A stretch of 64,000 nucleotides of DNA from Macrostomum hystrix (taxonomy: Eukaryota; Animalia; Platyhelminthes). Positions 13,032-64,000 of the stretch are shown here, piece after piece. Under the pieces are notes generated by a model. That model was given only the letters and a program-made list of their open reading frames with translations, was not told the origin of the DNA and did not search any database. Position numbers and translations under genes: made by a program. The stretch lies in assembly GCA_950097015.1 (NCBI GenBank), contig CATNEN010000010.1:2418001-2482000 (forward strand), in the 5' to 3' direction. Position 1 is the first letter of the stretch. Each line of letters starts with the position of its first letter.

Positions 13032-13324
13032 ATGGTGCAGTGGTCGACACAGAAGCATCGCGGACGCCACCAGTGCTCACCTGAGACTTGACTCTGGCTA
13101 GCAGTGTGTTGAATTTATTCAACTGTCAATTGATTGTGCCTCCATTGAGAAGGATTAAGTTAATAAAAAGTAGCGTGATACGATTTTTGTGTTAAGAGTT
13201 GATTTATTGGTTTCAGTGAGGAATGAAGTCGGCTGAATCAATGTGACGACGTTTTTGGACTCAAAAGATCGTTATTGTTTTCATCGTGTCTGTTCTTTTT
13301 CTTTTGTTTAGTTTGGAATAATCC

Positions 13325-18851: not shown

Positions 18852-20993
18852 ATGACTGAGACAGAGAACTTCTGTGCTATAACAGGTACTTTTTAGTTTC
18901 TTTTTGTATAATTATTAGCCTATTCATTGGTTCATTGCAAATCACCGATGCTATTTGGAAAACCTGCATTAAATGTGTTTTCTACAATTTAATTTTGAGT
19001 AGTTTTAGCAGTCTGGTACTTCTGGTACTGGCAGTCAGATATTTTTGGTCATTAGTGTAAGAAGCTTAATTTCCATTTGCTTTGGTTAACCCGCTGTAAC
19101 ATGGGCACCAGCATGAGCTGTGTATGGGTTTGGGTGTGGTGGCCTCTCAAGTCTAAGGACTGAACAGCTGTAAACGGCCTTTAGCTGCTAATCAATTATG
19201 ACCTATGGCTAGCTGTACACACCCTTGGAAGCCCCGCACCCTAGCTTTGGCCTGCCTATTTTCTTCCATTTTCCTTTTAATCAGGTGCAACAGACACAGT
19301 CGCTGCCCAGTACTTGGCCGCCTGCAACAACAACCTGGAGATGGCGCTCAACATGTACATGGAGACCGGACCGCCCACCCCAGCCAATCACCACCATCGC
19401 CACCTGCGCGATCTCGATGGCCTAGCTGACGATAGCAACGGCGCCGACTCTGGCCTCGTTGCCACGCCGGAGCAGCTCGGCGACCGGGCGCCGATGCCGC
19501 AGGTTGTGGCGCAGCTGGCACCGAATGCTGGCGCCGCATTTGCTGTGGCAGGCAATGGCGGCGCCAGGCAGACTGTGCAGCCCTTTGCCGATCATCGGGC
19601 CGCTATGCTAGACGAAGCCGGAGCTGGCGGCAGCGGCGGCAACCATCGGGCAGGGAAGCGCAGCCTGCACGACTTGTACCGCCCGCCAACCAGCCTCATG
19701 CACCTGGGCAGCCTGGAGTCGGCAATGCAGCAGGCCAGGCTTGCCGGCAAATGGTTGCTGGTTGACCTGCAGGTAACGCGAAGGGCCAACGAAATCCTGT
19801 GAATAATGGCCTTCCAAATTCGGGTATGGGGAGGACCGTGTATTCGGGTATGGGCATGACTTAAATGTTAAAGTAGGCGGAAGTGACTTTGGTCAATAGA
19901 TTAAAGGAAGGAGCGGATGTGCCATTCTATAGATAAAAGAAAGGGGCGGATGTGGCAGTCTATAGATAAAAGAAAGGGGCGGATGTGGCAGTCTATAGAT
20001 AAAAGAAAGGGGCGGATGTGGCAGTCTATAGATAAAAGAAAGGGGCGGATGTGGCAGTCTATAGATAAAAGAAAGGGGCGGATGTGGCAGTCTATAGATA
20101 AAAGAAAGGGGCGGATGTGGCAGTCTACAGGCGATAGGAAGGAGCGGATGTGGCAGTCTACATATTTTAAAAGCGAGTCGCCGATCGCAAACTTACCGCC
20201 GACCGGCATGCCGCAGGATGTCAGCGAGTTCGGCTGCCAGCTGCTGAATCGCGACCTCTGGTCGGACCCGGCTGTTCAGTCAGTACTTGAGGCCAGCTGC
20301 GTGTTCCTTCAGCTGGACAGCCGTTCGTCCGCTGGCAACCGGTTCTCAGTCAATTACCGGGCGCCGAGCGGAGCACCTTTTGTAGCTCTGCTGGACCCGG
20401 TGACTGGCGAGCAGCGCCTGCGGTTTGTCCCCGGCCAGCTTCGCCACATCGACAGCTTTCTGGACCGGCTGACCGAGTTCCTGGCACATTTTGAGCGGCC
20501 GGAGTGCCTGCCGGAGCCCGAGGCGGATACTGCGATGGACGGAGAGGCACCGACCGCGGCCAAGCGGGCCCGATCAAAATCGCCCCCGCCGCCACCGCCG
20601 CCGCTGCCTGCGGAGAAGGGCGAAAATGGAGCTCATCGCACTGTTGAGCACGATGAGGAGGCCGAGGCTGAGCAACTTCGGCGGGCTGTGGCCGCGTCGC
20701 GCCTAGCCGATGGCCAGCAGGAACACCGGCGCTGGCTGGGCGACCCGGACGAGGCCGAGCGCTGTCGGCTGCTGATCCGCTACCCGGACGGCCGGCGTTG
20801 CTCCCTGGACTGGCCGGCAAGCAGCCGGCTGAAGGCGCTGATTGTCCTGCTGGCTGGCGAGGGCTTCCCCGCCGAGGACTACGAACTGCTGGCCACGCAT
20901 CCCAGGCGGCTGTTGTCCCAGCTGAAGCCTCTGGCCAGCCTCCGCGAGCTGGGACTCTGCCCCTCTGACACTGTGTACGTGCAGGCCAAGTAG
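18852..20993 (+). CDS. UBXN7: UBX domain protein 7 (UBA-like, UAS, UIM, UBX); exons 18852-18885, 19285-19772, 20217-20993
   Basis: FCAITG|ATDTVAAQYLAACNNNLEMALNMY, DLYRPP, GKWLLVDLQ|DVSEFGCQLLNRDLWS, LRRAVAAS, RLLIRYPDGRR; phases consistent. Confidence 0.92.
19910..20160. repeat. 33-bp minisatellite in UBXN7 intron 2
   Basis: Tandem GGGGCGGATGTGGCAGTCTATAGATAAAAGAAA, about 7 units. Confidence 0.95.
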
Positions 20994-32914: not shown

Positions 32915-33444
32915 AGGGCGGCCTAAGTCCAGCTCCATCTAGCGGCTTGGCTTTTTCAAGTTTTTGTTCTTGTTGATCACTTTTGTTAAAAACTTCACTT
33001 GGTTTTTTCAGTAGAACTACCCTAATCTCAACTTGTTTTCTAGTTCATCTTATCCTATCATACTTTTAGTATTCTGTTTTCCTGCATTTGTTGCCAGTTT
33101 ACAAAACCCAGTAATTCATTCAATAGCATTCATCAAAACTCATTCAGTTCTATTTAATAGCCTTGTCAGATGCCCAGCCTTTTTTACAACATTTTTACTT
33201 GCAGTTACTTGCAGTTCATTCCGCTCTGCATTTTCTGTGTTTCTCAGTTTCGGCTTTTGCCCTTGTTAAATAAAAAAAAATTAAATAACTTGCTTTGGCC
33301 TAAAGAGAAGCCTGACCAACATGGTCTTCCAGAAAATTGGAATCTGGCATCTGGTTTTCCAGTGCTTTTTAGCTTTTCATTTTTCTGACAAACTGAGCAA
33401 AACAGCCTGGCCCTCCCAGTCATACACCACCCAGCACCCACCCT

Positions 33445-35850
33445 ACCCTCTCCCAAACAGCTCTCCCATACTGCTTTCCCACCCAGCTCTCCCACCCTGC
33501 TCTTTCACACTGCTCTCCCACCCAGCTCTCCCATACTGCTCTCCCATACTGCTCTCCCACCCTGCTCTCCCATACTGCTCTCCCATACTGCTCTCCCACC
33601 CAGCTCTCCCACACTGCTCTCCCACACTGCTCTTCCACCCTGCTCTCCCACCCAGCTCTCCCACACTGCTCTCCCACACTGCTCTTCCACCCTGCTCTCC
33701 CATACTGCTCTTCCACCCTGCTCTCCCATACTGCTCTCCCATACTGCTCTCCCACACTGCTCTTCCACCCTGCTCTCCCATACTGCTCTTCCACCCTGCT
33801 CTCCCATACTGCTCTTCCACCCTGCTCTCCCATACTGCTCTTCCACCCTGCTCTCCCACACTGCTCTTCCACCCTGCTCTCCCATACTGCTCTTCCACCC
33901 TGCTCTCCCATACTGCTCTTCCACCCTGCTCTCCCATACTGCTCTTCCACCCTGCTCTCCCATACTGCTCTCCCATACTGCTCTCCCACCCAGCTCTCCC
34001 ACACTGCTCTCCCACCCTGCTCTCCCACCCAGCTCTCCCACACTGCTCTTCCACCCTGCTCTCCCATACTGCTCTCCCACCCTGCTCTCCCATACTGCTC
34101 TCCCATACTGCTCTCCCACCCAGCTCTCCCACACTGCTCTCCCACACTGCTCTTCCACCCTGCTCTCCCACCCAGCTCTCCCACACTGCTCTCCCACACT
34201 GCTCTTCCACCCTGCTCTCCCATACTGCTCTTCCACCCTGCTCTCCCATACTGCTCTCCCATACTGCTCTCCCACACTGCTCTTCCACCCTGCTCTCCCA
34301 TACTGCTCTTCCACCCTGCTCTCCCATACTGCTCTTCCACCCTGCTCTCCCATACTGCTCTTCCACCCTGCTCTCCCACACTGCTCTTCCACGCTGCTCT
34401 CCCATACTGCTCTTCCACACTGCTCTCCCATACTGCTCTTCCACCCTGCTCTCCCACACTGCTCTTCCACCCTGCTCTCCCATACTGCTCTTCCACCCTG
34501 CTCTCCCATACTGCTCTTCCACCCTGCTCTCCCATACTGCTCTTCCACCCTGCTCTCCCATACTGCTCTCCCACACTGCTCTCCCAACCTGCTCTCCCAT
34601 ACAGCTCTCCCATACTGCTCTCCCATACTGCTCTTCCACCCCGCTCTCCCACCCTGCTCTCCCATACTGCTCTCCCATACTGCTCTCCCATACTGCTCTT
34701 CCACCCTGCTCTCCCACCCTGCTCTCCCACACTGCTCTTCCAACCTGCTCTTCCACACTGCTCCCCACACTGCTCTTCCACCCTGCTCTCCCATACTGCT
34801 CTCCCACCCTGCTCTTCCACCCTGCTCTCCCATACTGCTCTCCCACCCAGCTCTCCCACACTGCTCTTCCACCCTGCTCTTCCACCCTGCTCTCCCATAC
34901 TGCTCTCCCACCCAGCTCTCCCACACTGCTCTTCCACCCTGCTCTTCCACCCTGCTCTCCCATACTGCTCTCCCACCCTGCTCTTCCACCCTGCTCTCCC
35001 ATACTGCTCTTCCACCCTGCTCTTCCACCCTGCTCTCCCATACTGCTCTTCCACCCTGCTCTTCCACACTGCTCTCCCACACTGCTCTCCCACCCTGCTC
35101 TCCCACACTGCTCTCCCACCCTGCTCTCCCATACTGCTCTCCCATACTGCTCTTCCACCCTGCTCTTCCACCCTGCTCTCCCATACTGCTCTTCCACCCT
35201 GCTCTCCCATACTGCTTTCCCACACTGCTCTCCCATACTGCTCTCCCACCCTGCTCTCCCACCCTGCTCTCCCACACTGCTCTCCCATACTGCTCTCCCA
35301 CCCTGCTCTCCCACACTGCTCTCCCACCCTGCTCTCCCACACTGCTCTCCCACACTGCTCTCCCACCCTGCTCTCCCACACTGCTCTCCCACCCTGCTCT
35401 CCCATACTGCTCTCCCATACTGCTCTTCCACCCTGCTCTTCCACCCTGCTCTCCCATACTGCTCTTCCACCCTGCTCTCCCATACTGCTTTCCCACACTG
35501 CTCTCCCATACTGCTCTCCCACCCTGCTCTCCCACCCTGCTCTCCCACACTGCTCTCCCATACTGCTCTCCCATACTGCTCTTCCACCCTGCTCTTCCAC
35601 CCTGCTCTCCCATACTGCTCTTCCACCCTGCTCTCCCATACTGCTCTCCCACCCTGCTCTCCCACACTGCTTTCCCACCCTGCTCTCCCACACTGCTCTC
35701 CCACACTGCTCTCCCACCCTGCTCTCCCACACTGCTCTCCCATACTGCTCTCCCACCCTGCTCTCCCACACTGCTCTTCCACACTGCTCTCCCATACTGC
35801 TCTCCCACCCTGCTCTCCCACCCTGCTCTCCCACACTGCTCTCCAATACT
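33445..35850. repeat. 2.4-kb 13-bp variant-repeat minisatellite, about 185 units
   Basis: Interspersed CTGCTCTCCCACA / CTGCTCTCCCATA / CTGCTCTTCCACC / CAGCTCTCCCACA. Confidence 0.97.
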
Positions 35851-36240
35851 CCCATACTTCCTCTGCCAAGGCTGTCCGATTGAGCAGAGCTTGAGGGGCG
35901 GCAAGTACTGGGTGGGGCAGTTTGCTTTGGTCTGATACTGGAATATTAATTGCGTCAATGTGCGTGCGCGCGCCTGCCTATCGTGTAGGATCAGTGCATC
36001 AGGAGACACCAGTGTGCATTTCAATGTAATAGGCTAAAGTGCAATCATCAAATCCTTGACTCGCAGAATTAGTTTGAGCTGCTGTCTAGGCTCGCAAATC
36101 ACTTAGTATTGCAACAATTAAGCTCCGATGGGTCCGCGACCGTTTCTTGTCAATGTCTCACAGATTTGTAGTTGGTCTGTGCAGAGTTTTAGGTCAGTTT
36201 CAATTTTATGCTCAACTGTGCTTCTTTTCTCTTGCGAATT

Positions 36241-46506: not shown

Positions 46507-47107
46507 TCACTGAGAAATCGCAGCGTGATAATCTGCGTTTTTCAGCGCAGAACAAAAAGTAGAAACACAAGGTTTGAAAACTGATTTATCGCAAAAATCA
46601 ATTGATCTTTGTACTTTTAGACAAATTTCGCACAGCAACAAATGAGCGCACGGCAGGGTCACGTGACTCCGGGCTCTGCGCCTGCAACTGATGCACCTGT
46701 CTGATGCCTCTTCGAAATCACGCTTCCTGCTGCTGGACAATGAATCTGAAGAAGACACTACCCGTTGCCCGGTCTCTGCTGCTCTGCCATCGGTCTCTGC
46801 TGCTCTGCCATCGGTCTCTGCTGCTCTGCCATCGGTCTCTGCTGCTCTGCCATCGGTCTCTGCTGTGCGGACGCTCCCGACGCATCAAGCAATGCGCTGA
46901 CGCTCAGCGCGGCCTCCACGTCGATCCCGTGACCGCAGTCGGGAAGCAGCCGCTCGCACTCGTGGATCAGCTCGATGAGGTCGCCCGGTCTGCTGGCCAG
47001 ACGGTCTCCCTGAGTCATGAAATGACGACAGGCGCAGAACATCACGCTGCTCCTGTCGAAGCCGTACGACTCGACCAGACCGAGCATCGACTTGCGCTCG
47101 AGCAGGT
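46507..47107 (-). pseudogene. IAP-like copy A, 3' part (UBA-like, 4x MAEQQRP, RING), frameshifted before the RING
   Basis: LLERKSMLGLVESYGFDRSS.., repeat, then stop GNG*. RING CISC..HVTLPCAHLLLCEIC is in another frame. Confidence 0.85.
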
Positions 47108-50100
47108 TGTTGTTGTTGTTGTTGGCGTACGGATCCCTCGCTAGGCATATGGGGGGCGCGCCAGCGCGCCCGTCGCCTCGACGAAGATCCGCACCCGATT
47201 CGGGGCCTCCCACAGGAGGGACATTGAGCCAGCAGAATGGAGGAGTTTGTGGCGTTGATCGGCCCACCTGGGGCATTCAAGCAGGAAGTGCCGCGTGTCC
47301 TCCTCGGGAGCGTTGCAGTGAGGGCAAGACGCAGCGGGTACCTTGCCCCAGCGGTGTAGAGTGGCTTGTAGGAAAGGCGCGCGGTTCGCCCTGAGTTGGA
47401 ACAGCGCCACCTCCGCCGCACGAGGCCAGGCACGGCCGACCTGCAGCCGTTTGCCGCCGCTGAGTCGGTGTGGGTGGTCCAGAGGGACTAGGTCTTTGTA
47501 GGCTCGGTCATCTTCCGCTTGACCTTGCCGCTTGAGAGCAGCTCTGAGTGCCGCGACCGGTGTTGGCATGTTCTCTTGCGGGAGCGAGCAGCCCCCGCGA
47601 GCCAGAATGTCGGCTTCCTCATTGAGCGCCAGCCCGGCGTGGCCCGGTACCCAGATTACAGTGGGCCGGTGGTCCGTGGCGAGCTGCTCCAGCAGAATGG
47701 ACGCCTGTGCAGTTGCGTGGTCTGTCTGGCATTTACGCTGTGACTGGAGCCGGTCGAAGAGCGCTTGGGAGTCGAACAGCAGCCAGACGGACATGCTGGG
47801 GCGTCCGTGGAGATTGGCCAGGGCCACCTCGAGACCAGCTGCGGCCGCAGCGGCCTCCGCGGTCGTTGAGCAGGTTAGGTGCCCCGCTGGGACACTGCCT
47901 CTGATGTCCCGGCTCCCTGGGGCCCGCTGCCGAATCAGGTAGCCGCCTCCTCCATTACGGATGCCTTCCTCTGCTGCGCCGTCGGTCCAGATCTGCAGGT
48001 CTGGTGGGTCTTCCTGCCTCAGGCGGTCTAGCAGCTCCAGGGTTCTTGTCCTCCGAACAACTGGTGCCTCGTCGCGGCTGGTTTCGACACGGACGAACCA
48101 GGTCGGGAGACTGCGGGACCAGGGGCGACGAAAGCAGGTGGGGGGGATACGGCCTTCCACCCGGTCGCGGCCTCCTTCCACAGTGCTCAGTGTCTCGATG
48201 GCCGACTCGCGCCAAGAGCTTCGGGTGCCCGCGGTCCTCGCCTTGAGTCTGGTGCGGGTGGCAGACGGGCTGGCCAGATCGCGAAGTAGATGCCCTTCAG
48301 GGAACTGCTGGCAGCGCAGGAGCAGCTCCGCGGCCCTCTGCCGGCAGATGGTGTTGAACGGCTAGAGGCCGGCGTCGTAGATTAGGGCGCGGGCCCGGGC
48401 TCCGGCGCCGACCCGTGTGATGATCCTAGCAGCGGCATAGTTGGCGGATTCGAGACGTTCGCGGTGGGTGGGGGCCAGGAACGGCCACCAAAGTTCAGCC
48501 CCGTATGGCCCTGCCGGACGAACGTAACTGCAGTAGAGGCGGTGTAGAGTCTCAAAGCTCGCACCCCAGGATCTCGCGGCAACGCAGCGGAGAGCCGCGA
48601 GCCTCCTGTGCAGCGCCGCGAGAGACTTCTTTGCTTGTTCAGCGAAATTGAGCTGCGAGTCGATCGTTACTCCCAGGACCTTGATCTCGCGCATGCAGGA
48701 GACGGTGTGTCCGCCGGCTTGCAGAGTGCCGCCGAACTTGCCGTTGAGCTCAGCCGGGTGGGTACTGATAAGGATGGCTTCAGTCTTCGCCGGCGCCAGC
48801 TTGAAGTGGTGTTCCTCGCACCAGCCGCTCACCGCGTCGATCGCGGCCTGCATCTGCACTGTAGCCGTCACCGGGGAGGCGTCTGATATCTTCACAGTGA
48901 GGTCGTCCGCGTATTGGATGGGCCTACACTTGGGTGCCGCCTGCTGAATGGCCCCGGGCAGGGTCCGAGTGGCGATGTTGAAGAGCAGAGGCGAGAGTGG
49001 ACTGCCTTGCGGTACGCCTTCTTTTAGGACTCGGAGTCGACTGAATTGTGTTCCCCAGCGGACGCAGGCGCGCCGGTCAGCCAGAAACGAGCGAAGCCAC
49101 CGCATCCAGCCGGCCGGTGCTCTGGCCCGAGCGAGCTCACGCAGGACCCCTAGGCGCCAAGTGCGATCGAACGCCGCTTGAAAGTCGAACGCGGCAAGCA
49201 AGGTCCTTGTCATTGGCCGTGTCTGAAGAGAGTCGAATGCTGGTTGAGCCAGCTGGGCCACGGCGTCGAGGGTGCTACGACCCGCTCGGAAGCCTGACTG
49301 CTCATCGGGGATCAGGCCGTTCTCTTCGGCCCAGGCATTCATGCGATTGTTGACCATGGCCTCGAGGGTCTTGCCTACACAGCTCAGCAGAGAGACTGGG
49401 CGGTAGGAGGCTGGGTCGTGGTTCGGCTTGTCTTTCTTAGCGATTGGACAAATGATGGCCGTGCGCCACGCTGAGGGGACTCTCCCCTCTCGCCAGCTCC
49501 TGTTCAACAGAGTCAAAAGCGCCCGCCGGCCTTCGTCTTGTAGTTTCTGCAGAAATGCTGAAGGGGCGGAGCCTGCGGAGCTCCGGAGGACGTCCGCCAG
49601 TTCCGCCATGTGAAATGGGGCCCCGCGTGGGTCTTTGCTGCATGTTCCGAGCGCTCTACGGACCTCGAGTCTGGCTCCTTGTTGGTCTGTTTTCGGGACT
49701 CTGAGCCGGCTGACTGCCACGTAGGTTTTAATCGCCAGGTCCGCTTTTTCCCTGTCCGTGGTTGCTGTCTTTTCGCCCTGCCGTAGCGGCGTGTCCGGGA
49801 GCGGCTGCCGGGCCCTACCATCCAGCGCCCGGATTGTCCGCCACACCTTGGATTCAGGTGCGCGGGTGGATAAGCCGGAGACGAATTGCCGCCTGGCTGC
49901 GGCCTTGGCCTGACTATAGACGCGATCCGCATTCTCGCGAGCAGTGCGGTAAGCCGCCGCTGCGTCCTCATCTCCCTGGGCAGCCCTGGAGTCTGCTAGC
50001 GTCTCACGCGTGGCCCGTTGTGCGGTTCGACAGCTGTCATTCCACCAGCTCTTGGGCTTCTTGACACTCCCTCGCGGGATGCAGCTGGCAGCGGAGAGAA

Positions 50101-50958
50101 GGCGTCTGCAGAACTCGCTGTTGGCGGCCTCTATCGATCCGAAAGCATCGGCCGACCAGTGACGGAGTTGCTCATCGGCCTTTCCGGCGAATAGCGGCCA
50201 GTCCGCACGTTTGAGATTGTACTGGGCGGGTTTGCGGCTGCCTTTCGGTTGCGTGAAGGCCACTGTCAGTAGAATTGGTAGGTGATCTGACCCCATGGTG
50301 TCTTTGACGTCCCAGCTGACATGGCTGGACATCTCTGCGTGACACAGCGAAACGTCCGGGGTCGACTCCTGGGTCCTCCTGGGCTTACACGCGTCGGACT
50401 TCCGTCGTTCAAGGTCGTCCAGCTGTGGTTGGTCATCCAGTCTTCGAGCTCTTCGCCTATTGCGTCTGGGTCTCTTAGCTCGTCCCAACTGCCGTGCGCA
50501 TTCAGATCTCCGAGCAGCAGCCAGTTGCTTTCTGTTGGCCACATGTCGGCATGCAGCCTGCCGTCCCGCTCGTCTCTTGCCGAAGTGCGGACCGGCGGTC
50601 TGTAGACGTTACTGATGTAGAGAGGGCGTTTCTTGTTGCCGAGGAGCCGGATCGTGAGGTGCTCCAGCGCTGCGGTCTCTGGGACTCCCAAGGCCCCCTG
50701 GGCCACTTCGTGGGCAAGCCCGTGCCTGACTAAGGTGAGGAGCCCGCCGTGATGGCCTGCTGCCCCCCTGTGAACGGCACGGTCCCGCCGGTGTGCAGAG
50801 AAGCCTGCTATCTTAGGGGTGTGATCTTGTGCTGTCAGATTTGTTTCCTGAAGGACTGCCACGTCCACTTGAAGCTCCTCTAGAAGATGTTCGAGAGCCG
50901 GGCGCCGCATCCGCAGGCCGTTGAGGTTCCATTGCAGGATGCGGATGTCGGCTTGAGA

Positions 50959-51030
50959 AGGTCCGGGATTTTGCTCAATGTCCCCCGACAGTAGAAGACG
51001 GCAGCGAGACTCGTCGGGGTTGGTCTGCTG
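50959..51030 (-). other. 2A-like ribosomal stop-go peptide at start of LINE ORF
   Basis: QTNPDESRCRLLLSGDIEQNPG-P matches D(V/I)ExNPGP; APE domain starts a few residues later. Confidence 0.9.
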
Positions 51031-51085
51031 CCCACCCGAAAACCCGAAGGTCTGGGTGCGGGCACCGAGGCGGCATCCGGTGGGT

Positions 51086-51151
51086 GGAGGCACTTTGCGC
51101 AGTAAAGCTGCGACATCGGTCCCCTCGGGAAGGGGGCCTCCGTTGACCGAC
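51086..51151 (-). ncRNA. HDV-like (CPEB3-type) self-cleaving ribozyme at the LINE 5' end
   Basis: GUCGGUC AAC GGAGGCC CCC UUCCCGA GGG GACCGAU GU CGCAG CUUUA CUGCG CAAA GUGCCUCC: P1 7 bp with G1-U37 wobble, P3 3 bp, L3, GU linker, P4 5 bp, J4/2 CAAA, P2 with one bulged U. Confidence 0.88.
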
Positions 51152-51502
51152 GCTCAAGCAGGTCGCTCCTCAGCTTGGCGAGAGCGCGCCTCAGCTTCGT
51201 CGAGCTCGTCACGCTCGCTCAGCATGCCGGGAGCCACCTTGAGCAGTCGGAGCAGCTCGCACTGCTCGCCGAGCTGCTCGTGAAGGCGCAGCGGCTCCGC
51301 GTCGTCTGTCGACTCGGCGGTGGCGGCTGAGGTTGCCTGCGGCACCGGAAGCTGGCTGCCGCAGTGGAAGCAGCGGACTGCAGCCGCGCCGTCAGTCAGG
51401 AAGAAGCCCGCGTCCGCCCATCGGCATCGGGCCGCCTCGTCCAGGTGGACCGCCGACCTGAGCGACTGCAAACGGCGCGAGCGCAGCGCGAACTCGGGAC
51501 AC
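51151..51502 (-). pseudogene. IAP-like copy A, 5' part (BIR), truncated at its 5' end
   Basis: Near-identical to copies B-D from CPEFALRSRRL to DLLER. Homology stops at 51502, so acceptor and leader are absent. Confidence 0.88.
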
Positions 51503-51975
51503 GGATGACCTACGTATGCACGCAATGACATTCCGGTGAGCTGGTTTATAGTAGGCTAGGCTAGTGCCTTGAGTGTCGCCCTTAGTAAATTTCACTACAA
51601 GTCTTCAAGCCTTCTCACCGCGGCTGCCCAACATCAAATCTATGTCTATGTGAAAGATCTATGTCAAACGGATGACCTACGTATGCACGCAATGACATTC
51701 CAGTGAGCTGGTTTAGTAGGCTAGGCCATATAAACAACTGTCAGTACTTGACGATGCTAAAAATAGCTAGCGGCAGAATGTACACTCAACTCAGTCAATC
51801 CGACGCACAGAACCCGTGCTCTGCTGGCCTTCAAGACGTATGGAAGGCGTACATCGCCCTTCTTCTGTACTCTGTTTAAAGAATTCTGTATAAAAGGGAG
51901 CTCTGCTCTTGACAGACCCTAACCAGAGCATTCACTGTCCCCCCAGATTCTTCGCGGTTCAGAAACAATCAGAAA

Positions 51976-53514
51976 ATGGCAGTGTTTAGCAGACTCATAG
52001 AGGTTCGGCTGGATTCAGTCAGTGCAGCCTACAGATCGGGTAAGCCAATGCGTTCATCTCATAGCCAATGAAGCTTACTAAATCGTTGCTTTAAAACTGC
52101 CTTTATCACAATCCAACAAAACCTAACCTTTCTGCTTCCAGGCAGCCTGGTGTTCTGCGTCACGGCGGCCAGGTGTCCCGAGTTCGCGCTGCGCTCGCGC
52201 CGTCTGCAATCGCTCAGGTCGGCGGTCCACCTGGACGAGTCGGCCCGATGCCGATGGGCGGACGCGGGCTTCTTCCTGACTGACGGTGCGGCTGCAGTCC
52301 GCTGCTTCCACTGCGGCAGCCAGCTTCCGGTGCCGCAGGCGACCTCCGTCGCCACCGCCGAGTCGACAGACGATGCGGAGCCGCTGCGCCTTCACGAGCA
52401 GCTCGGCGAGCAGTGCGAGCTGCTCCGACTGCTCAAGGTGGCGCACGGCATGCTGAGCGAGCGACACGAGAAGGTCGTGACGAGCTCGACGAAGCTGAGG
52501 CGCGCTCTCGCCAAGCTGAGTAGCGACCTGCTCGAGCGCAAGTCGATGCTCGGTCTGGTCGAGTCGTTCGGCTTCGCCAGGAGCAGCGTGATGTTCTGTG
52601 CCTGTCGGCAGTTCATGACTCAGGGAGGCCGTCTGGCCAGCAGACCGGGCGACCTCATCGAGCTGATCCACGAGTGCGAGCGGCTGCTTCCCGACTGCGG
52701 TCACGTGATCGACGTGGAGGCCGCGCTGAGCGTCAGCGCTTCGCTTGATGCGTCGGGAGCGTCCGCACAGCAGAGACCGATGGCAGAGCAGCAGAGACCG
52801 ATGGCAGAGCAGCAGAGACCGATGGCAGAGCAACAGAGACCGATGGCAGAGCAACAGAGACCGATGGCAGAGCAGCAGAGACCGATGGCAGAGCAACAGA
52901 GACCAATGGCAGAGCAGCAGAGACCGATGGCAGAGCAGCAGAGACCGATGGCAGAGCAGCAGAGACCGATGGCAGAGCAGCAGAGACCAATGGCAGAGCA
53001 GCAGAGACCAATGGCAGAGCAGCAGAGACCGATGGCAGAGCAGCAGAGACCGATGGCAGAGCAGCAGAGACCGATGGCAGAGCAGCAGAGACCGATGGCA
53101 GAGCAGCAGAGACCAATGGCAGAGCAACAGAGACCAATGGCAGAGCAGCAGAGACCGATGGCAGAGCAGCAGAGACCGATGGCAGAGCAGCAGAGACCAA
53201 TGGCAGAGCAGCAGAGACCAAATGCAGCGCAGCAGAGCTCAGAGAAAGTCAGTGCTGCAGCTGGTTTTGAGAAGGGCCCCATATCGGAGGACAAGGTCAT
53301 GTCTGGCCGACTTCAGACTCAAATCTCAGTGGAAGAGGAAGGCGAGGAAGCGGCTGAGAGCGACCAGTGCGTGCAGTGCCGCCAGCGCACCCGGGATCAC
53401 GTGACCCTGCCGTGTGCGCACTTTCTGCTGTGCCACGGCTGCATCAGCGGCAGGCGGGACTGCCCTCGGTGCGGCTCGCCCATCTTGGCTGCCCTGAGGG
53501 CCTTCATCTCCTGA
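51976..53514 (+). CDS. IAP-like copy B (BIR, UBA-like, 21x MAEQQRP, RING); exons 51976-52039, 52142-53514
   Basis: RL.S..ADAGFFL..VRCFHC..H.6.C BIR; SFGF..SV UBA-like; CVQC..HVTLPCAH..C..C..CPRC..AFIS IAP-type RING; phase-1 gtaag/ccag intron. Confidence 0.85.
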
Positions 53515-54680: not shown

Positions 54681-57473
54681 GCTCGCACCGGCGGGACACA
54701 GTGCCTGTGAGGTATGAGTCAGTCCAGGCCCACGGGCTATGGCCTGCGATGCCTCACACCTGCAGTCGTTTCTTGAGCAGGCCGGGCAGGAAGGAGACCT
54801 GTGCCTTCGGGTACAGGAATCCCTCCGCGCTGTCCCGTCAGCTGACCCATGGGTACACGTCCCGCGAGTGTTCAAGGCTGACCCTAGGGCAGCCGGACAG
54901 AATGGGCAACAGCGCTGGATGACCCATCCAGGGCCTCCGGCCAAACTGGGTACCTCTAGCCCCGGCTGGAGGGAAAGGTGTCACCCTATGACCTTAACAG
55001 GGTATGCGGCCAGTCCGCAGCGTTTTTGCAGCTCAAGGATGGCTTCCTCCATCTCCTCTGCAGACTTCTACGGGCCTGCATCGTGCTGGGCTATGTACCA
55101 GCGCTGTGGCACGAAGCCCGGGTCGTCTTCATCCCGAAGCCCGCCAAAGGCGACTATCGCTCGGTCAAGTCCTATCGCCCGATAAGCTTGACTTCCACCT
55201 GCCTCAAGCTCATGGAAAGACTGGTGCTCTGGCGCCTTCTTACTGTAGAGCTAGGGCGGGCCCCGCTCTCCCCAAACCAGCACGCCTTTCGGGCGGGCCG
55301 GTCCACGGAGAGCGCCCTCCACTGCATCGTGGAGACTCTCGAGAAGGCAGTGCTGGGCAGCGGTTTTGCCCTGGCTGTCTTCCTAGACATTGAGGGGGCC
55401 TTCGATAACGTTGTTTTCGAAGCTTTTGAGGAGGCCCTGGTTTCCAGGGCCACTCACCCCCACCTCGTTCGCTGGGTCATGTACATGATCCGGCATCGCC
55501 ACGTGGTGGCCCACCTCGAAGGCAGGCTGCTCTCGGCACCTGTCCTAAAAGGAGGGCCCCAAGGCGGCGTCCTCACCCCACTGCTGTGGAATCTCGTCAT
55601 GGATGAGCTGCTGAAAAGCACTCGTCCTGACCCAGTCCTGAAGGTGGGATATGCCGACGATGTGACCGCCATCTGCGCGGGCCCCTCGGCGGAAACCACC
55701 AGGGACCTCATCCAGGGCTTTATCAACAGGGCGGTGCGCTGGGCGGACCAATGCGGGCTCCGACTCTCTGAGTCCAAGACCGTTGCGGTTATGTTTACCA
55801 GCAGACTGCTCTGGACCATTAAGCCTCTGACTCTCTATATGGCAAGAATATTGCCATGGAAAAGCAGGTCCGGTGCCTTGGTCTCCTGCTAGACCATAGG
55901 CTTAACTGGACCCCGCACGTCACCACAAAGGCCAAGAGGGCCCTGGCCATACTGGCGCAAGTCAGGCGTGCCGTGGGCACCACTTGGGGGCTAACCCCAA
56001 AGAACCTTTGGTGGATTTACACGGCGATCATTAGACCGTCCGTCGCTTACGCTGGCCTCATCTGGGCCAGCGCCATGAGCATCCAGATCATTGCAGGGCA
56101 TAGGGTGCAGGGCAGAGCCTGTCGTATGACGCTGGGCGCCCCACCCTCCACTCCCTTCGAAGGCATGAATGCTTTCCTCAACGCTACACCCATTGACATT
56201 TTCGTCAAGGGGGAAGCAGCAAAAGTCCACCCGTCGTCTCCTTGATGCGGGTGTCTCCTTCCAGAATTCGCGAGCCTTCTCGAAGCGCTCCCTTCTGCCT
56301 CACTCTGACCTCTGCCTGAAAACTCTGGGCGAGTGCGGAGGGCTCACCATCCTTTCGGACGGGGCCCCGGCCACTTTACTCCGGAGTCACAGGTACAAAG
56401 TCAGCATCTCCCCTCGTAATGAGGTAAAGGACTGCTGGGATGACCCGGCAGTCCACTGTTACACTGACGGCTCTCTGATGAACGGTAAATCGGGATTCGG
56501 AGTGTGCGTCGCCTCGGGTGGTGAGGTCCTCTGGACCCACTCCCAATACTGTGGCAAGAGCTCTAGCGTTTTCCAAAACGAAGTGCTCGCCATCAGCTTC
56601 TGTGCGGCTGAGCTGCGCCAGAGGCAACTGGCTGGTCGGAGGATCTTTTTTCACTCCGACAGTCAATCAGCCCTCAAGGCCCTCAGCCGCTGCACCTCCC
56701 GCTCCAGAACCACCTTGGACTGCAACACCCAGTTAAACGGGCTGGCGCAGTCTAACAAGGTGGAGCTGTTGTGGATCCCTGGGCATGCCGGGTTCACAGG
56801 GAATGAGATGGCGGACCAGCTTGCTAAGGCTGGAGCAGCCAGCTCCCTGATGGGCCCGGGCCCGGAGTCCCCGATCCCCATCTCTGTTGTCAACTCCAGC
56901 ATCAACCGCTGGATGGAGACCCAGCACCGGAGGAGGTGGTCCAGCACCCTGAACTGTCGCCAGTCCAGGGCTGCGGTGCCAACCCCCTCTAGTAACCTGC
57001 GTAAGGCCTTACTCCGGCTTAACCGCAGAGACCTAAGAGCAGTCACTATGGCCCTTTCGGGACATGGCTGCTTCACCAGACACCGCTACCTTCAAGGCCA
57101 CGTGCCTGAGGAAACGTGTCCCTTCTGCTGCTCCGGACGTGAAAATGCAGAGCACTTCATCTGCCACTGCCCGGCCTTCACCCGGGCTAGGCTAAAACAT
57201 CTCGAGCCGGCACCGACTCTTGCCGAAGCCTGCTCGCCCGAGAACATCCCACAGCTCGCCCACTTCCTCCGGGATACCGGCCGAGCTGATTTCTTCCCAG
57301 CCTATGGCGAGGAAGATCGCGCGGCGGAATCGACCGACGGAACACCCTGAGCGGCACCGCCTCGCTGGAGGCTGTCTGGCTGCCAGGGGTTAGCGATATG
57401 GGCGGCATCAGCCGCCTCCTCGCTGCGTCCGTCATGGAGGCTCCCTGCCGCTAAGTCAAGTCAAGTACGTCAA
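54681..57473 (+). mobile_element. 5'-truncated RT-RNase H non-LTR retrotransposon (I group, Loa/R1-like), at least two frameshifts
   Basis: [81 protein letters not shown]; (AAGTC)n tail; 14-bp TSD GAACCCCTCTGACC at 54667-54680 and 57474-57487. Confidence 0.9.
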
Positions 57474-58822: not shown

Positions 58823-59872
58823 ATGTCAACCACAACGTCAGGCAGCCTGGTGTTCTGCGTCACGGCGGCCAGGTGTCCCGAGTTCGCGCTGCGCTCGCGC
58901 CGTTTGCAGTCGCTCAGGTCGGCGGTCCACCTGGACGAGGCGGCCCGATGCCGATGGGCGGACGCGGGCTTCTTCCTGACTGACGGTGCGGCTGCAGTCC
59001 GCTGCTTCCACTGCGGCAGCCAGCTTCCGGTGCCGCAGGCGACCTCCGTCGCCACCGCCGAGTCGACAGACGACGCGGAGCCGCTGCGCCTTCACGAGCA
59101 GCTCGGCGAGCAGTGCGAGCTGCTCCGACTGCTCAAGGTGGCGCACGGCATGCTGAGCGAGCGACACGAGAAGGTCGTGACGAGCTCGACGAAGCTGAGG
59201 CGCGCTCTCGCCAAGCTGAGGAGCGACCTGCTCGAGCGCAAGTCGATGCTCGGTCTGGTCGAGTCGTTCGGCTTCGACAGGAGCAGCGTGATGTTCTGCG
59301 CCTGTCGGCAGTTCATGACTCAGGGAGGCCGTCTGGCCAGCAGACCGGGCGACCTCATCGAGCTGATCCACGAGTGCGAGCGGCTGCTTCCCGACTGCGG
59401 TCACGTGATCGACGTGGAGGCCGCGCTGAGCGTCAGCGCATTGCTTGATGCGTCGGGAGCGTCCGCACAGCAGAGACCGATGGCAGAGCAACAGAGACCA
59501 ATGGCAGAGCAGCAGAGACCGATGGCAGAGCAGCAGAGACCGATGGCAGAGCAGCAGAGACCGATGGCAGAGCAGCAGAGACCAATGGCAGAGCAGCACA
59601 GACCGATGGCAGAGCAGCAGACGAATTTTACGAGTTATGATGTGGGGAGTCTTTCGGCCCACAAAGTGAGCAATGGACTCCAGATGCAATACCCGAAGCC
59701 TGAGTTAGAAGACAGTCAGGACCAGTGCGTGCAGTGCCGCCAGCGCACCCGGGATCACGTGATCCTGCCGTGTGCGCACTTCCTGCTGTGTCACGTCTGC
59801 ATCAGCGGCAGGCGGGACTGCCCTCGGTGCGGCTCGCCCATCTTGGCTGCCATGAAGGCCTTCATCTCCTGA
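58823..59872 (+). CDS. IAP-like copy C (BIR, UBA-like, 6x MAEQQRP plus partial, RING), intact ORF 349 aa
   Basis: Single ORF; acceptor-like ttttatgcag 10 nt before ATG. Confidence 0.88.
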   Translation: MSTTTSGSLVFCVTAARCPEFALRSRRLQSLRSAVHLDEAARCRWADAGFFLTDGAAAVRCFHCGSQLPVPQATSVATAESTDDAEPLRLHEQLGEQCELLRLLKVAHGMLSERHEKVVTSSTKLRRALAKLRSDLLERKSMLGLVESFGFDRSSVMFCACRQFMTQGGRLASRPGDLIELIHECERLLPDCGHVIDVEAALSVSALLDASGASAQQRPMAEQQRPMAEQQRPMAEQQRPMAEQQRPMAEQQRPMAEQHRPMAEQQTNFTSYDVGSLSAHKVSNGLQMQYPKPELEDSQDQCVQCRQRTRDHVILPCAHFLLCHVCISGRRDCPRCGSPILAAMKAFIS

Positions 59873-63393: not shown

Positions 63394-64000
63394 ATGCAGG
63401 TCAGCAACGTCTTCAGTCAGACATTCGTCAGAGCACTGACTACGAAGGAGCCTGATGAATACAGCATTAACAGCCTGGTGTTCTGCGTCACGGCGGCCAG
63501 GTGTCCCGAGTTCGCGCTGCGCTCGCGCCGTCTGCAGTCGCTCAGGTCGGCGGTCCACCTGGACGAGGCGGCCCGATGCCGATGGGCGGACGCGGGCTTC
63601 TTCCTGACTGACGGCGCGGCTGCAGTCCGCTGCTTCCACTGCAGGCAGCCAGCTTCCGGTGCCGCAGGCGACCTCCGTCGCCACCGCCGAGTCGACAGAC
63701 GACGCGGAGCCGCTGCGCCTTCACGAGCAGCTCGGCGAGCAGTGCGAGCTGCTCCGACTGCTCAAGGTGGCGCACGGCATGCTGAGCGAGCGACACGAGA
63801 AGGTCGTGACGAGCTCGACGAAGCTGAGGCGCGCTCTCGCCAAGCTGAGGAGCGACCTGCTCGAGCGCAAGTCGATGCTCGGTCTGGTCGAGTCGTTCGG
63901 CTTCGACAGGAGCAGCGTGATGTTCTGCGCCTGTCGGCAGTTCATGACTCAGGGAGGCCGTCTGGCCAGCAGACCGGGCGACCTCATCGAGCTGATCCAC
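63394..64000 (+). pseudogene. IAP-like copy D, runs off window, +1 frameshift in the BIR
   Basis: In-frame leader MQVSNVFSQ..SINSLVFC; TGCAGGCAGC versus TGCGGCAGC in copies A-C at about 63643. Confidence 0.8.

What the first reader, a model, noticed from the sequence alone, without database searches (positions are those of the whole stretch)
50940..51151. Compact ribozyme + hairpin + AUG-less frame + 2A expression cassette
The retrotransposon frame is open from nucleotide 2 of the ribozyme to the 2A with no AUG; an in-frame TGA lies just upstream in the TSD. The only early AUG (RNA 36-38, inside P1) is out of frame. A ribozyme-cleaved RNA is uncapped, so translation must be cap-independent and non-AUG, or frameshifted. 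The 2A then standardises the N-terminus wherever initiation occurs. All of this fits in about 190 nt. A comparable pairing is known for trypanosomatid L1Tc. An animal, probably flatworm, example with the extra hairpin is the best candidate for an undescribed system in this window.
Basis: inference. Interest (0 to 1): 0.85.

Follow-up and report, generated by a model that had tools for sequence, protein, structure and literature searches.

The report
Retrotransposon leader: ribozyme, slip-knot, 2A
The front end of a broken flatworm jumping gene carries a self-cutting RNA and a 2A "skip" peptide (a pairing already known from trypanosome L1Tc), and between them lies something apparently undescribed: a leader with no stop codon in any reading frame that ends in a frameshift-type slippery site and pseudoknot, which suggests how such elements are translated without a fixed start codon.

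Summary
On the minus strand, 51151-50959 carries a 66-nt HDV-like ribozyme fold that starts at the element's 5' junction. Three uninterrupted paralogues of the host gene in the same window fix that junction. A leader with no in-frame AUG follows, then a canonical 2A (DIEQNPGP), then APE-RT-RNaseH-zinc finger. The copy is broken. The host is a macrostomid flatworm.

Relatives are 36-57% identical in protein. They show covariation in all four ribozyme helices.
- The leader, from ribozyme nt 1 to a U-tract, has 0 stop triplets in all three frames in 13 elements (about 20 expected in the first 10; 39 on their antisense strand). Off-frame stops resume just after the U-tract.
- The U-tract is G_GGU_UUU in the +1 frame, an efficient -1 slippery heptamer.
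- Six nt downstream lies a covarying H-type pseudoknot, inside the conserved 29-30 codon 2A unit.

AUGs are scattered over frames or absent.

My reading is that ribosomes enter the leader in any frame, from a variable or non-AUG start or from a host ORF. Frameshifting funnels them into the 2A frame, and 2A trims the N-terminus. Ribozyme plus 2A is already known from L1Tc. The stop-free leader and the slip-knot appear new. No biochemical assay was possible, so cleavage, frameshifting and 2A skipping are all inferred.

The parts
51151..51162 (-). 5' copy of the 12-bp target-site duplication (CCTGCTTGAGCG). It contains the in-frame TGA at 51156-51154, which arose by a C-to-T change.
   Evidence: Alignment with three empty paralogous sites and with the 3' copy.
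51086..51151 (-). HDV-like ribozyme fold, 66 nt. P1 51151-51145/51121-51115; P2 51141-51136/51091-51086; P3 51135-51133/51124-51122; P4 51112-51098; candidate catalytic C at 51097. The predicted cleavage site is 5' of G51151.
   Evidence: Descriptor scan. Covariance model R1 finds it in 12 related loci, including two not used to build the model. Of 21 pairs, 18 have changes on both sides; 86.6% of cells are paired against 65.7% in shuffles, with 0 of 500 shuffles as high.
51114..51116 (-). AUG at RNA 36-38, in the +1 frame relative to the 2A frame. It is open to the slippery site 24 codons on.
51074..51076 (-). Second leader AUG, RNA 76-78, in the +2 frame.
51046..51085 (-). Variable part of the leader. 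It does not align between relatives, yet it has no stop triplet in any frame.
   Evidence: 0 stops against 8.2 expected over 10 elements. The antisense strand of the same leaders carries 39.
51039..51045 (-). U-tract / slippery heptamer GGGUUUU. It reads GGG UUU in the 2A frame and G_GGU_UUU in the +1 frame.
   Evidence: UUUU is invariant in 13 of 13 aligned elements and sits 24-25 codons before the N of NPGP. G_GGU_UUU is listed among the most shift-prone -1 heptamers (PMC5009743).
50983..51032 (-). Candidate H-type pseudoknot, 6 nt after the heptamer. S1 is 51032-51022 / 51012-51000. The loop CCCCGAC (51019-51013) pairs with GUCGGGG (50989-50983).
   Evidence: All 9 S1 pairs have compensatory changes, with 0 of 500 shuffles as high. 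S2 is 87.9% paired, with two pairs covarying at third-codon positions.
50959..51045 (-). 2A unit of 29 codons (GFSGGQQTNPDESRCRLLLSGDIEQNPGP). The StopGo site lies between G (50964-50962) and P (50961-50959).
   Evidence: Translation; motif scan. The unit is 29-30 codons long in the 11 relatives tabulated.
50368..50937 (-). AP endonuclease domain. The frame is lost near 50360.
   Evidence: Pfam Exo_endo_phos, E 6e-15; alignment with relatives.
48662..49435 (-). Reverse transcriptase domain, in a second ORF piece (50542-48365).
   Evidence: Pfam RVT_1, E 2e-36.
47270..48001 (-). RNase H and a C-terminal zinc-binding motif, in a third ORF piece (48181-47144).
   Evidence: Pfam RNase_H, E 1.9e-9; zf-RVT, E 7e-4, below Pfam's curated cut-off.
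47107..47124 (-). 3' tail, (CAA)6.
   Evidence: Sequence at the 3' junction.
47095..47106 (-). 3' copy of the target-site duplication (CCTGCTCGAGCG).
51154..51531 (-). 5' part of the interrupted host gene (BIR domain of a BIR-repeat-RING, IAP-like protein). It is in the sense orientation and in the same frame as the element's 2A frame.
   Evidence: Translation; Pfam BIR and RING hits on the paralogues; repeats.

Best explanation
This is the 5' expression module of an L1Tc-like non-LTR retrotransposon (single ORF: 2A, APE, RT, RNase H, zinc finger) that inserted into an IAP-like gene of a macrostomid flatworm and has since decayed.

Proposed mechanism:
1. The HDV-like ribozyme cuts the element RNA out of a host co-transcript exactly at element nt 1. 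This leaves an uncapped 5'-OH RNA headed by the folded ribozyme.
2. Translation begins somewhere in the leader without a dedicated start codon. It uses whatever AUG or near-cognate codon is present, in whatever frame. For this reason the leader, ribozyme included, is kept free of stop codons in all three frames.
3. At the end of the leader sits a slippery U-tract (G_GGU_UUU in the +1 frame), a 6-nt spacer and an H-type pseudoknot. These shift ribosomes arriving in the +1 frame by -1, and possibly those arriving in the +2 frame by -2, into the 2A frame. Ribosomes already in that frame read straight through. Ribosomes that fail to shift meet off-frame stops within a few dozen nt.
4. The 29-30 codon 2A unit then releases the arbitrary N-terminal peptide by StopGo. 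The APE-RT protein therefore always starts with the same proline.

Shown here: the fold and its covariation, the exact 5' junction, the stop-free leader, the conserved heptamer, spacer and pseudoknot, the 2A motif, and the lack of a conserved AUG.
Inferred: self-cleavage, frameshifting, 2A activity, and where ribosomes come from.
For: Junction and ribozyme:
- Empty-site paralogues place the ribozyme's G1 at the element boundary.
- All four helices covary. This includes P2, which was not part of the model used to align the sequences.
- The model also finds two relatives fetched later, at E 2e-7 and 1e-5.

Stop-free leader, first 10 elements:
- 0 stop triplets against 20.2 expected.
- Per frame: 0 against 6.7, 6.5 and 6.9 expected.
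- Ribozyme part 0 against 11.2; variable part 0 against 8.2.

Controls:
- U-tract to NPGP, off frames: 22 against 10.4 expected.
- Next 600 nt of the ORF, off frames: 74 against 70.7.
- Upstream flank: 33 against 38.4 (all).
- Antisense strand of the same leaders: 39 stops.
- The pattern recurs in L004 and, out of sample, in L091 and L092.
- The first off-frame stops come 4-160 nt after the U-tract.

Slip site and pseudoknot:
- UUUU is invariant and in a fixed register.
- G_GGU_UUU is among the most shift-prone heptamers.
- S1 and S2 covary.

Start codons:
- AUGs fall in F0 in 5 leaders, F+1 in 6, F+2 in 4, and in none in 3.
- AUG triplets are not depleted: 12 observed against 9 expected.

Precedent: HDV-like ribozymes of R2 and L1Tc are proposed to act like IRESs, and ribozyme-terminated RNAs were reported as translated as well as, or better than, an HCV IRES control (PMC6765202, PMC3383444).
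Against: - No experiment was possible. Cleavage, frameshifting and StopGo are all inferred from sequence.
- Four relatives have GUGUUUU, so P-site re-pairing would be poor.
- L007 has two +2-frame stops just upstream of its U-tract.
- -2 shifting is a guess.
- The peptide from GF to NPGP is conserved, so part of the nucleotide conservation is coding constraint.
- S2 covariation rests on few independent changes.
- A stop-free ribozyme is more naturally explained if ribosomes come from upstream of it (rival 1).
- How a 40S subunit would load on a 5'-OH RNA headed by a tight pseudoknot is unknown.
- The window copy is broken, so its own frame relations (AUG36 in +1) could reflect a later indel.
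Confidence: 0.45

Rival explanations
1. Read-in translation on uncleaved co-transcripts. The element has no start of its own. Ribosomes that began on the host gene's AUG run across the junction in whichever frame the insertion created. The three-frame-open leader lets them reach the slip-site, the frameshift funnels them into the 2A frame, and 2A sheds the host-encoded peptide. The ribozyme acts on a different fraction of the RNA, or later, to make the template for reverse transcription.
For: - The stop-free zone starts at ribozyme nt 1 and covers the ribozyme itself (0 against 11.2 expected). This is what one expects if translating ribosomes come from upstream.
- The depletion is strand-specific.
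- The window copy sits in the sense orientation inside a host ORF, in the 2A frame, before the C-to-T change.
- 2A has an obvious purpose under this model.
- No AUG is conserved.
Against: - A fast HDV-like ribozyme would sever the host part before export.
- Most insertions are not in exons.
- Several copies have stops 3-33 nt upstream of the ribozyme or lie in AT-rich non-coding flanks.
- Flank stops are at the expected frequency.
- The in-frame window insertion is a single case, with a chance of about 1 in 6.
Confidence: 0.3
2. Conventional start. The active master copies start at an ordinary in-frame AUG in the leader, as in L091 and L092. This decayed copy lost the frame through an indel. 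The pseudoknot and U-tract then serve another purpose, for example a binding site for the element's own protein as in R2, or RNA stability.
For: - L091 (an ORF open for about 1320 codons) has an in-frame AUG 8 codons before the U-tract.
- L092 has an in-frame AUG at the same P1/J1-4 position where the window has AUG36, out of frame.
- The window copy carries at least two frame breaks elsewhere.
- The R2 protein binds a 5' pseudoknot (PMC6765202).
Against: - L002 and L084, whose ORFs are open for about 1300 codons, have no AUG in any frame of the leader.
- L001, also with a long open ORF, has one only in the +1 frame.
- This model does not explain why all three frames are kept stop-free up to the U-tract and not beyond it.
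- It does not explain the exact slip-site geometry either.
Confidence: 0.15
3. Spliced-leader rescue. In flatworms a capped spliced leader ending in AUG is trans-spliced onto the leader and supplies both the cap and the start codon, in a frame set by the acceptor site. This would select for a leader open in all frames.
For: - The host is a macrostomid.
- From my own knowledge, unchecked here, flatworm spliced leaders end in AUG and that AUG can initiate translation (Cheng et al. 2006).
- About half of the elements have a U-tract followed by YAG within 6-15 nt.
Against: - L001 has no AG after the U-tract.
- The AG, where present, is a paired base of S1.
- The metagenomic relatives are of unknown taxa.
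- The model makes the ribozyme redundant.
- Nothing was tested.
Confidence: 0.05

Closest known systems
L1Tc / ingi non-LTR retrotransposons of trypanosomatids (Pr77/L1TcRz + L1Tc2A)
   Same: - An HDV-like ribozyme occupies the first nucleotides and cleaves at +1.
- A 2A lies in frame just upstream of the AP endonuclease.
- Single ORF: APE, RT, RNase H, C-terminal nucleic-acid-binding zinc finger.
- Target-site duplication of usually 12 bp.
- Cap-independent, IRES-like translation has been proposed.
(PMC5814959, PMC3185411, PMC3383444, PMC6765202)
   Different: - The host is an animal (flatworm), not a kinetoplastid.
- The 3' tail is (CAA)n, not poly(A).
- No test of promoter activity or of sequence homology to Pr77 was possible.
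- The three-frame stop-free leader and the heptamer-plus-pseudoknot are not mentioned in the L1Tc papers I read.
- RT phylogeny was not done.
Ribozyme-terminated non-LTR elements of animals (R2, R4, R6, SART, Baggins, RTE; Eickbush 2010, Ruminski 2011)
   Same: - An HDV-like ribozyme at the 5' junction frees the element from a host co-transcript.
- The ribozyme is proposed to promote translation of the downstream ORF without a cap.
(As summarised in PMC6765202 and PMC3774820. The primary papers were not available.)
   Different: - Those elements have no 2A.
- R2 is site-specific and uses a restriction-like endonuclease.
- No slip-site or pseudoknot module, and no three-frame-open leader, is mentioned in the sources I could read.
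2A-bearing APE-type non-LTR elements of metazoans (Odon et al. 2013: CR1, L2, Rex1, Crack, Ingi-1_AC and others)
   Same: [quoted passage not shown]
- Mostly single-ORF elements.
- The authors note that 5' truncation hides the true start.
(PMC3708506)
   Different: - That paper contains no mention of a ribozyme (0 occurrences) and none of frameshifting in this context.
- Flatworms are not among the taxa it lists.
Coronavirus (IBV)-type -1 programmed frameshift signals
   Same: - Slippery X_XXY_YYZ heptamer, 6-nt spacer, H-type pseudoknot.
- Here S1 is about 11 bp, L1 2 nt, S2 7 bp, L3 10 nt.
- The 0-frame stop follows soon after.
(The heptamer ranking is from PMC5009743. The minimal IBV pseudoknot dimensions are from my own knowledge.)
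   Different: - Here the shift would lead into the main ORF near its start rather than extend a long upstream ORF.
- There is no defined upstream ORF or start.
- All three upstream frames are open.
- Some relatives have imperfect heptamers.
Cardiovirus StopGo next to a -1 frameshift site; arterivirus G_GUU_UUU -2/-1 frameshifting
   Same: - Two recoding events lie within a few dozen codons (PMC5009743).
- A U-rich G_GUU_UUU-type site allows shifts of both -1 and -2 (own knowledge).
   Different: - In cardioviruses the order is reversed (StopGo first) and the stimulator is a protein.
- In arteriviruses the stimulator is a protein bound to a C-rich motif, not a pseudoknot.

Membership tests
HDV-like self-cleaving ribozymes | Nested double-pseudoknot topology (P1, P2, P3, P4) supported by covariation | tested here: met
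   10 sequences and 21 pairs: 86.6% paired against 65.7% in shuffles, and 18 pairs with changes on both sides. All six P2 pairs covary although P2 was not in the aligning model.
HDV-like self-cleaving ribozymes | Cleavage site at the 5' end of a roughly 7-bp P1, with a G.U or G-C closing pair, coinciding with the functional 5' end | tested here: met
   G1.U37 in the window. Family counts at this pair: GU 4, GC 3, CG 1, unpaired 2. G1 is the last base of the target-site duplication, fixed by empty sites.
HDV-like self-cleaving ribozymes | Catalytic cytosine opening J4/2, followed by A-rich nucleotides | tested here: met
   An invariant C followed by (C)AAGU-like nucleotides in all aligned members; C at 51097 in the window.
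HDV-like self-cleaving ribozymes | P1.1 mini-helix between L3 and J1/4 | tested here: inconclusive
   In the window only one Watson-Crick pair (C23-G38) plus a U.U is possible. L002 could form CC/GG. Judged by eye.
HDV-like self-cleaving ribozymes | Match to a curated Rfam model (HDV, CPEB3, drz families) | tested here: not met
   No hit at gathering score, or at E<=10 on a 501-nt slice. From my own knowledge, these models are known to miss divergent HDV-like ribozymes.
HDV-like self-cleaving ribozymes | Self-scission in vitro | not testable with these tools
   Needs a transcription and cleavage assay.
2A / StopGo peptides | C-terminal D(V/I)ExNPGP motif | tested here: met
   DIEQNPGP at 50982-50959.
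2A / StopGo peptides | Upstream tract of about 20-30 residues of suitable, conserved length | tested here: met
   29-30 codons from GF/VF to NPGP in the 11 relatives tabulated, with LxLSGD and PD conserved.
2A / StopGo peptides | Peptide-bond skipping activity | not testable with these tools
   Needs a dual-reporter translation assay.
L1Tc/ingi-type non-LTR retrotransposons | Single ORF with APE, RT, RNase H and a C-terminal zinc finger | tested here: met
   Pfam hits in that order on three ORF pieces; the zinc-finger hit is below Pfam's cut-off. The copy is broken by frame changes. In relatives L001, L002, L084 and L091 the ORF is open for about 1300 codons.
L1Tc/ingi-type non-LTR retrotransposons | HDV-like ribozyme at nt 1, an N-terminal 2A, and a target-site duplication of about 12 bp | tested here: met
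   The L1Tc features are from PMC6765202 and PMC5814959.
L1Tc/ingi-type non-LTR retrotransposons | Poly(A) 3' tail | tested here: not met
   The tail is (CAA)6.
L1Tc/ingi-type non-LTR retrotransposons | RT phylogeny within the Ingi clade; homology of the first 77 nt to Pr77 | not tested
   No reference L1Tc or ingi sequence was obtainable with the tools. The named hits were only distant insect proteins.
-1 programmed ribosomal frameshift signals | X_XXY_YYZ heptamer in phase with the frame to be entered | tested here: met
   G_GGU_UUU enters the 2A frame in 8 of 15 elements, and L004 has U_UUU_UUU. Weaker variants occur in the others: G_UGU_UUU in 4, G_GUU_UUU in 1, G_UUU_UUU in 1.
-1 programmed ribosomal frameshift signals | Stimulatory structure 5-9 nt downstream, supported by covariation | tested here: met
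   The spacer has no gaps in 13 sequences. All 9 S1 pairs are compensatory. S2 has two covarying pairs and is 87.9% paired.
-1 programmed ribosomal frameshift signals | A defined upstream ORF in the pre-shift frame | tested here: not met
   The +1 frame is open in all elements but has an AUG in only 6 of 12 leaders. The other two frames are equally open.
-1 programmed ribosomal frameshift signals | Trans-frame product observed | not testable with these tools
   Needs reporters or mass spectrometry.

The most novel reading that the evidence does not exclude
A frame-agnostic translational hitch-hiking device. The retrotransposon keeps its whole leader, ribozyme included, free of stops in all three frames. 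Ribosomes arriving from any upstream host ORF, in any phase, therefore reach a slippery site and pseudoknot. That module merges the frames into one by -1 and -2 shifting. A 2A then discards the host-encoded peptide. Ribozyme cleavage and translation are alternative or successive fates of the same co-transcript.
Probability: 0.3. Interest if true: 0.9.

Novelty: new variant of a known kind. Interest (0 to 1): 0.72.

Why it matters
How promoter-less, cap-less, AUG-less non-LTR retrotransposons get translated has been open since the R2 and L1Tc ribozymes were found. 'IRES-like' is still the placeholder answer.

This family offers a concrete, testable architecture in under 200 nt. It has a three-frame stop-free leader with a sharp 3' boundary, one of the most shift-prone heptamers, a covarying pseudoknot and a 2A.

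If frameshifting really merges reading frames here, three things follow:
- It would be a new use of recoding: correcting an undefined start rather than setting a protein ratio.
- It would explain why so many single-ORF animal LINEs carry an N-terminal 2A.
- It would extend the L1Tc-type ribozyme-plus-2A pairing from kinetoplastids to animals.

The module could also be useful as a compact element for start-independent expression.

Tried and rejected
- **Rfam.** Scans at gathering score and at E<=10 gave nothing.
- **Siblings in the window.** Blastn found none. The second non-LTR element at about 55.0-57.3 kb (+) is only about 25% identical in protein and shows no APE or 2A.
- **Metagenome scan.** Only about 13 carried a 2A.
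- **Simple model: AUG36 followed by a -1 shift.** It fits the window, L001 and L003. It fails as a family rule, because AUGs are scattered over frames or absent.
- **GUG start placed by a downstream hairpin.** Only 4 elements have GUG at that position; the rest have GGG.
- **U-tract + YAG as a splice acceptor.** The AG is absent in L001 and is part of S1 in the others.
- **Composition or RNA structure as the cause of stop depletion.** Rejected on the dinucleotide shuffles, on the normal off-frame stop density in the ORF and flanks, and on the 39 stops on the antisense strand.
- **Model hit at window 10619-10690.** It lies inside an Mpv17/PMP22-like coding exon and lacks L3, so it is spurious.
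- **Hairpins between the ribozyme and the U-tract (RNA 72-119).** The minimum-free-energy fold of the whole 212 nt is not unusual (z = -1.3). This stretch does not align between relatives.
- **Primary papers.** Ruminski 2011 and Eickbush 2010 are not in the library. I cite them through reviews and from my own knowledge.
- **Clade assignment.** Placing the element by RT phylogeny against named references was not possible.
Full report
**What is at the coordinates.** Read on the minus strand, 51151-50940 begins with GUCGGUC and ends in the start of an AP endonuclease (ILQWNLNGL), just after RLLLSGDIEQNPGP. A degenerate DNA pattern for D(V/I)ExNPGP occurs once in the window against 0.01 expected. 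Downstream, three minus-strand ORF pieces carry Exo_endo_phos, RVT_1, RNase_H and a weak zinc-finger hit. The element is therefore a single-ORF APE-type non-LTR retrotransposon, now broken by at least two frame changes.

**The ends are fixed by the window itself.** The sequences flanking the element (51205-51502 and 46770-47107) lie next to each other, 96-98% identical, in three plus-strand copies at 52.2, 58.9 and 63.5 kb. These are paralogues of a BIR + 7-residue-repeat + RING (IAP-like) gene. Aligning the filled and empty sites gives a 12-bp target-site duplication. The 5' copy is 51162-51151 and the 3' copy is 47106-47095. The element runs 51150/51151 to 47107 and ends in (CAA)6.

The ribozyme's first base, G51151, is the last base of the 5' duplication copy. 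The predicted cleavage site is therefore the element boundary to within one nucleotide.

It is a later C-to-T change at a CpG. Before it, the host ORF (ATG at 51531) ran in the sense orientation and in the same frame into the element.

**Host.** A neighbouring intron-less UBX/thioredoxin-like ORF (19917-20990) has as its best hit, at 76% identity, a Macrostomum lignano protein. The next hits are about 27-40% identical.

**The ribozyme.**
- Rfam finds nothing.
- A descriptor scan for the HDV topology finds a 66-nt solution in the window. It finds equivalent ones 181-258 nt upstream of NPGP in relatives from ENA and JGI metagenomes that are 36-57% identical in protein.
- A covariance model was built with P1, P3 and P4 only. 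It aligns 10 sequences.
- On that alignment the full double pseudoknot has 86.6% of cells paired against 65.7% in shuffles.
- 18 of 21 pairs show compensatory changes, and no shuffle or slid control comes near.
- All six P2 pairs covary, although P2 was not in the model.
- An invariant C opens J4/2.
- Two relatives fetched afterwards are found by the model at E 2e-7 and 1e-5.
- P1.1 is weak. Activity is untested.
- L001 and L091 have a damaged P1 5' strand.

**No conserved start codon.**
- The window has no AUG in the 2A frame between the ribozyme and the 2A.
- It has two AUGs in the other frames: RNA 36-38 (+1) and RNA 76-78 (+2).
- Across 12 leaders, AUGs fall in the 2A frame in 5, in +1 in 6, in +2 in 4, and nowhere in 3 (L002, L084, L085).
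- L002 and L084 have ORFs open for about 1300 codons.
- AUG triplets are not depleted (12 observed against 9 expected).
- The 'AUG-less frame' is therefore a family trait in the sense that no AUG is conserved. It is not a universal absence.

**A leader open in all three frames.**
- From ribozyme nt 1 to a conserved U-tract, the first 10 elements (1485 nt) contain no TAA, TAG or TGA in any frame.
- Dinucleotide-preserving shuffles expect 20.2, or 6.5-6.9 per frame.
- Both the ribozyme part (0 against 11.2) and the unalignable part after it (0 against 8.2) are depleted.
- Controls behave normally. Off-frame stops between the U-tract and NPGP number 22 against 10.4 expected. In the next 600 nt of the ORF they number 74 against 70.7. 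In the 150-nt upstream flank, stops number 33 against 38.4.
- The antisense strand of the same leaders carries 39 stop triplets. Composition and RNA structure therefore cannot be the cause.
- Stops occur 3-33 nt upstream of several ribozymes, and 4-160 nt after the U-tract in the two off frames.
- The pattern recurs in a distant element with 50% GC (L004: 0 sense, 6 antisense).
- It also recurs in the two relatives fetched after the rule was formulated (L091 0/1, L092 0/6).
- L007 is a partial exception, with two +2-frame stops upstream of its U-tract.

**A slip-site and a pseudoknot at the boundary.**
- Peptide conservation starts abruptly at G/V-F, always 29-30 codons before the end of NPGP.
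- At the nucleotide level UUUU is invariant in 13 of 13 aligned elements. It is usually GGGUUUU followed by C or U.
- In the 2A frame this reads GGG UUU. In the +1 frame it is G_GGU_UUU. A recoding review lists that heptamer among the most shift-prone for mammalian ribosomes (PMC5009743).
- After an ungapped 5-6 nt spacer comes a 9-14 bp GC-rich stem. All nine aligned pairs show compensatory changes: 85% paired against 64%, 0 of 500 shuffles, and slid controls 37-53%.
- The loop (CCCCGAC, 51019-51013) is complementary to GUCGGGG (50989-50983), the Ser-Gly codons of LSGD.
- This second helix is 87.9% paired. It covaries at two third-codon positions (CG 5, GC 4, UA 1; and CG 6, UA 4, UG 1).
- L091 and L092 fit by eye.
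- The geometry is S1 11 bp, L1 2 nt, S2 7 bp, L3 10 nt. From my own knowledge, this is that of a minimal coronavirus-type frameshift pseudoknot.

**Interpretation.** A sharp switch from 'all frames open' to 'one frame open' occurs exactly at a canonical -1 frameshift cassette, followed 24 codons later by StopGo. This points to ribosomes reaching the cassette in more than one frame and being merged into the 2A frame. The 2A then removes the variable N-terminal peptide.

The data do not settle where those ribosomes come from. I favour variable AUG or non-AUG initiation on the ribozyme-cleaved RNA (confidence 0.45). It has experimental precedent (Ruminski 2011, via PMC6765202; PMC3383444).

Read-in from a host ORF on uncleaved co-transcripts (0.30) explains better why the ribozyme itself is stop-free. 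It also fits the in-frame, sense insertion seen in this window, but it conflicts with fast self-cleavage. A conventional in-frame AUG lost from this decayed copy (0.15) and spliced-leader AUG donation (0.05) remain possible.

**Comparison with what is known.** Ribozyme at nt 1 + 2A + APE-RT-RNaseH-zinc finger + 12-bp duplication is the L1Tc/ingi plan (PMC5814959, PMC6765202). The differences are an animal host and a (CAA)n tail. Clade membership could not be tested.

The survey of 2A in animal non-LTR elements (PMC3708506) and two recent 2A surveys (PMC12338488, PMC12846837) never mention a ribozyme. They do not link retrotransposon 2A to frameshifting either. Searches for a three-frame-open leader in this context, and for Macrostomum ribozyme retrotransposons, found nothing.

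I therefore class the finding as a new variant of a known kind. The base pairing is known. The stop-free leader and the slip-knot appear to be new, and they can be tested directly.

**Limits.**
- All functional steps are inferred from sequence.
- The relatives are metagenomic contigs of unknown taxa.
- S2 covariation rests on few independent changes.

Noticed in passing
window 52150-53514, 58823-59872, 63501-64000 (+), and the interrupted copy 51531-51154 / 47094 downward (-): A cluster of at least four paralogous intron-less genes encoding BIR + a 21-nt (7-residue) repeat region of variable length + a C-terminal RING (IAP-like). They are 96-98% identical in the aligned parts. One of them is the insertion target.
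   Followed up: partly
window 33310-35900: A large tandem array with a 13-nt period (about 180 copies) and strong GC and AT skew. It accounts for several long spurious ORFs on both strands.
   Followed up: no
window 54978-57350 (+): A second, unrelated non-LTR retrotransposon fragment (RT + RNase H, about 25% identical to the first) lying between two IAP-like genes. No APE, 2A or ribozyme was detected, so it is probably 5'-truncated.
   Followed up: partly
window 19917-20993 (+): An intron-less UBX/thioredoxin-like ORF, 76% identical to a Macrostomum lignano protein. This gives the taxonomic placement of the window.
   Followed up: yes
window 10265-10882 (+): An Mpv17/PMP22-like coding stretch. 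The covariance model gave a weak, spurious hit inside it (10619-10690, E 0.037).
   Followed up: yes
window 6996-7901 and 12165-13070: Two pairs of ORFs of identical length (288 and 299 aa on opposite strands), about 5.2 kb apart. This suggests a segmental duplication or another repeated element.
   Followed up: no
L085 nt 89-91, L090 nt 78-80, window 51156-51154: A TGA in the 2A frame lies 3-5 nt upstream of the ribozyme's first base in three of ten loci. In the window it is a secondary mutation. It could be chance (roughly P 0.04) or a hint of termination-coupled events.
   Followed up: partly
L086 nt 170-189: The ribozyme is directly preceded by an (AGA)n microsatellite. This could be the 3' tail of an upstream tandem copy or a microsatellite target. 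The window element itself ends in (CAA)6.
   Followed up: no
L084 minus strand, around nt 779: A second, different 2A-bearing element (LLLQAGVEPNPGP followed by a Cys-rich motif) lies in the opposite orientation on the same 8-kb contig.
   Followed up: no
L001 nt 103-110 and L084 (ribozyme L3/P3): L3 reads UUCACGUGGGG, which contains CGTG. That is the 4-nt core reported for the L1Tc Pr77 internal promoter (PMC5814959). It hints that the ribozyme DNA could double as a promoter here too.
   Followed up: no
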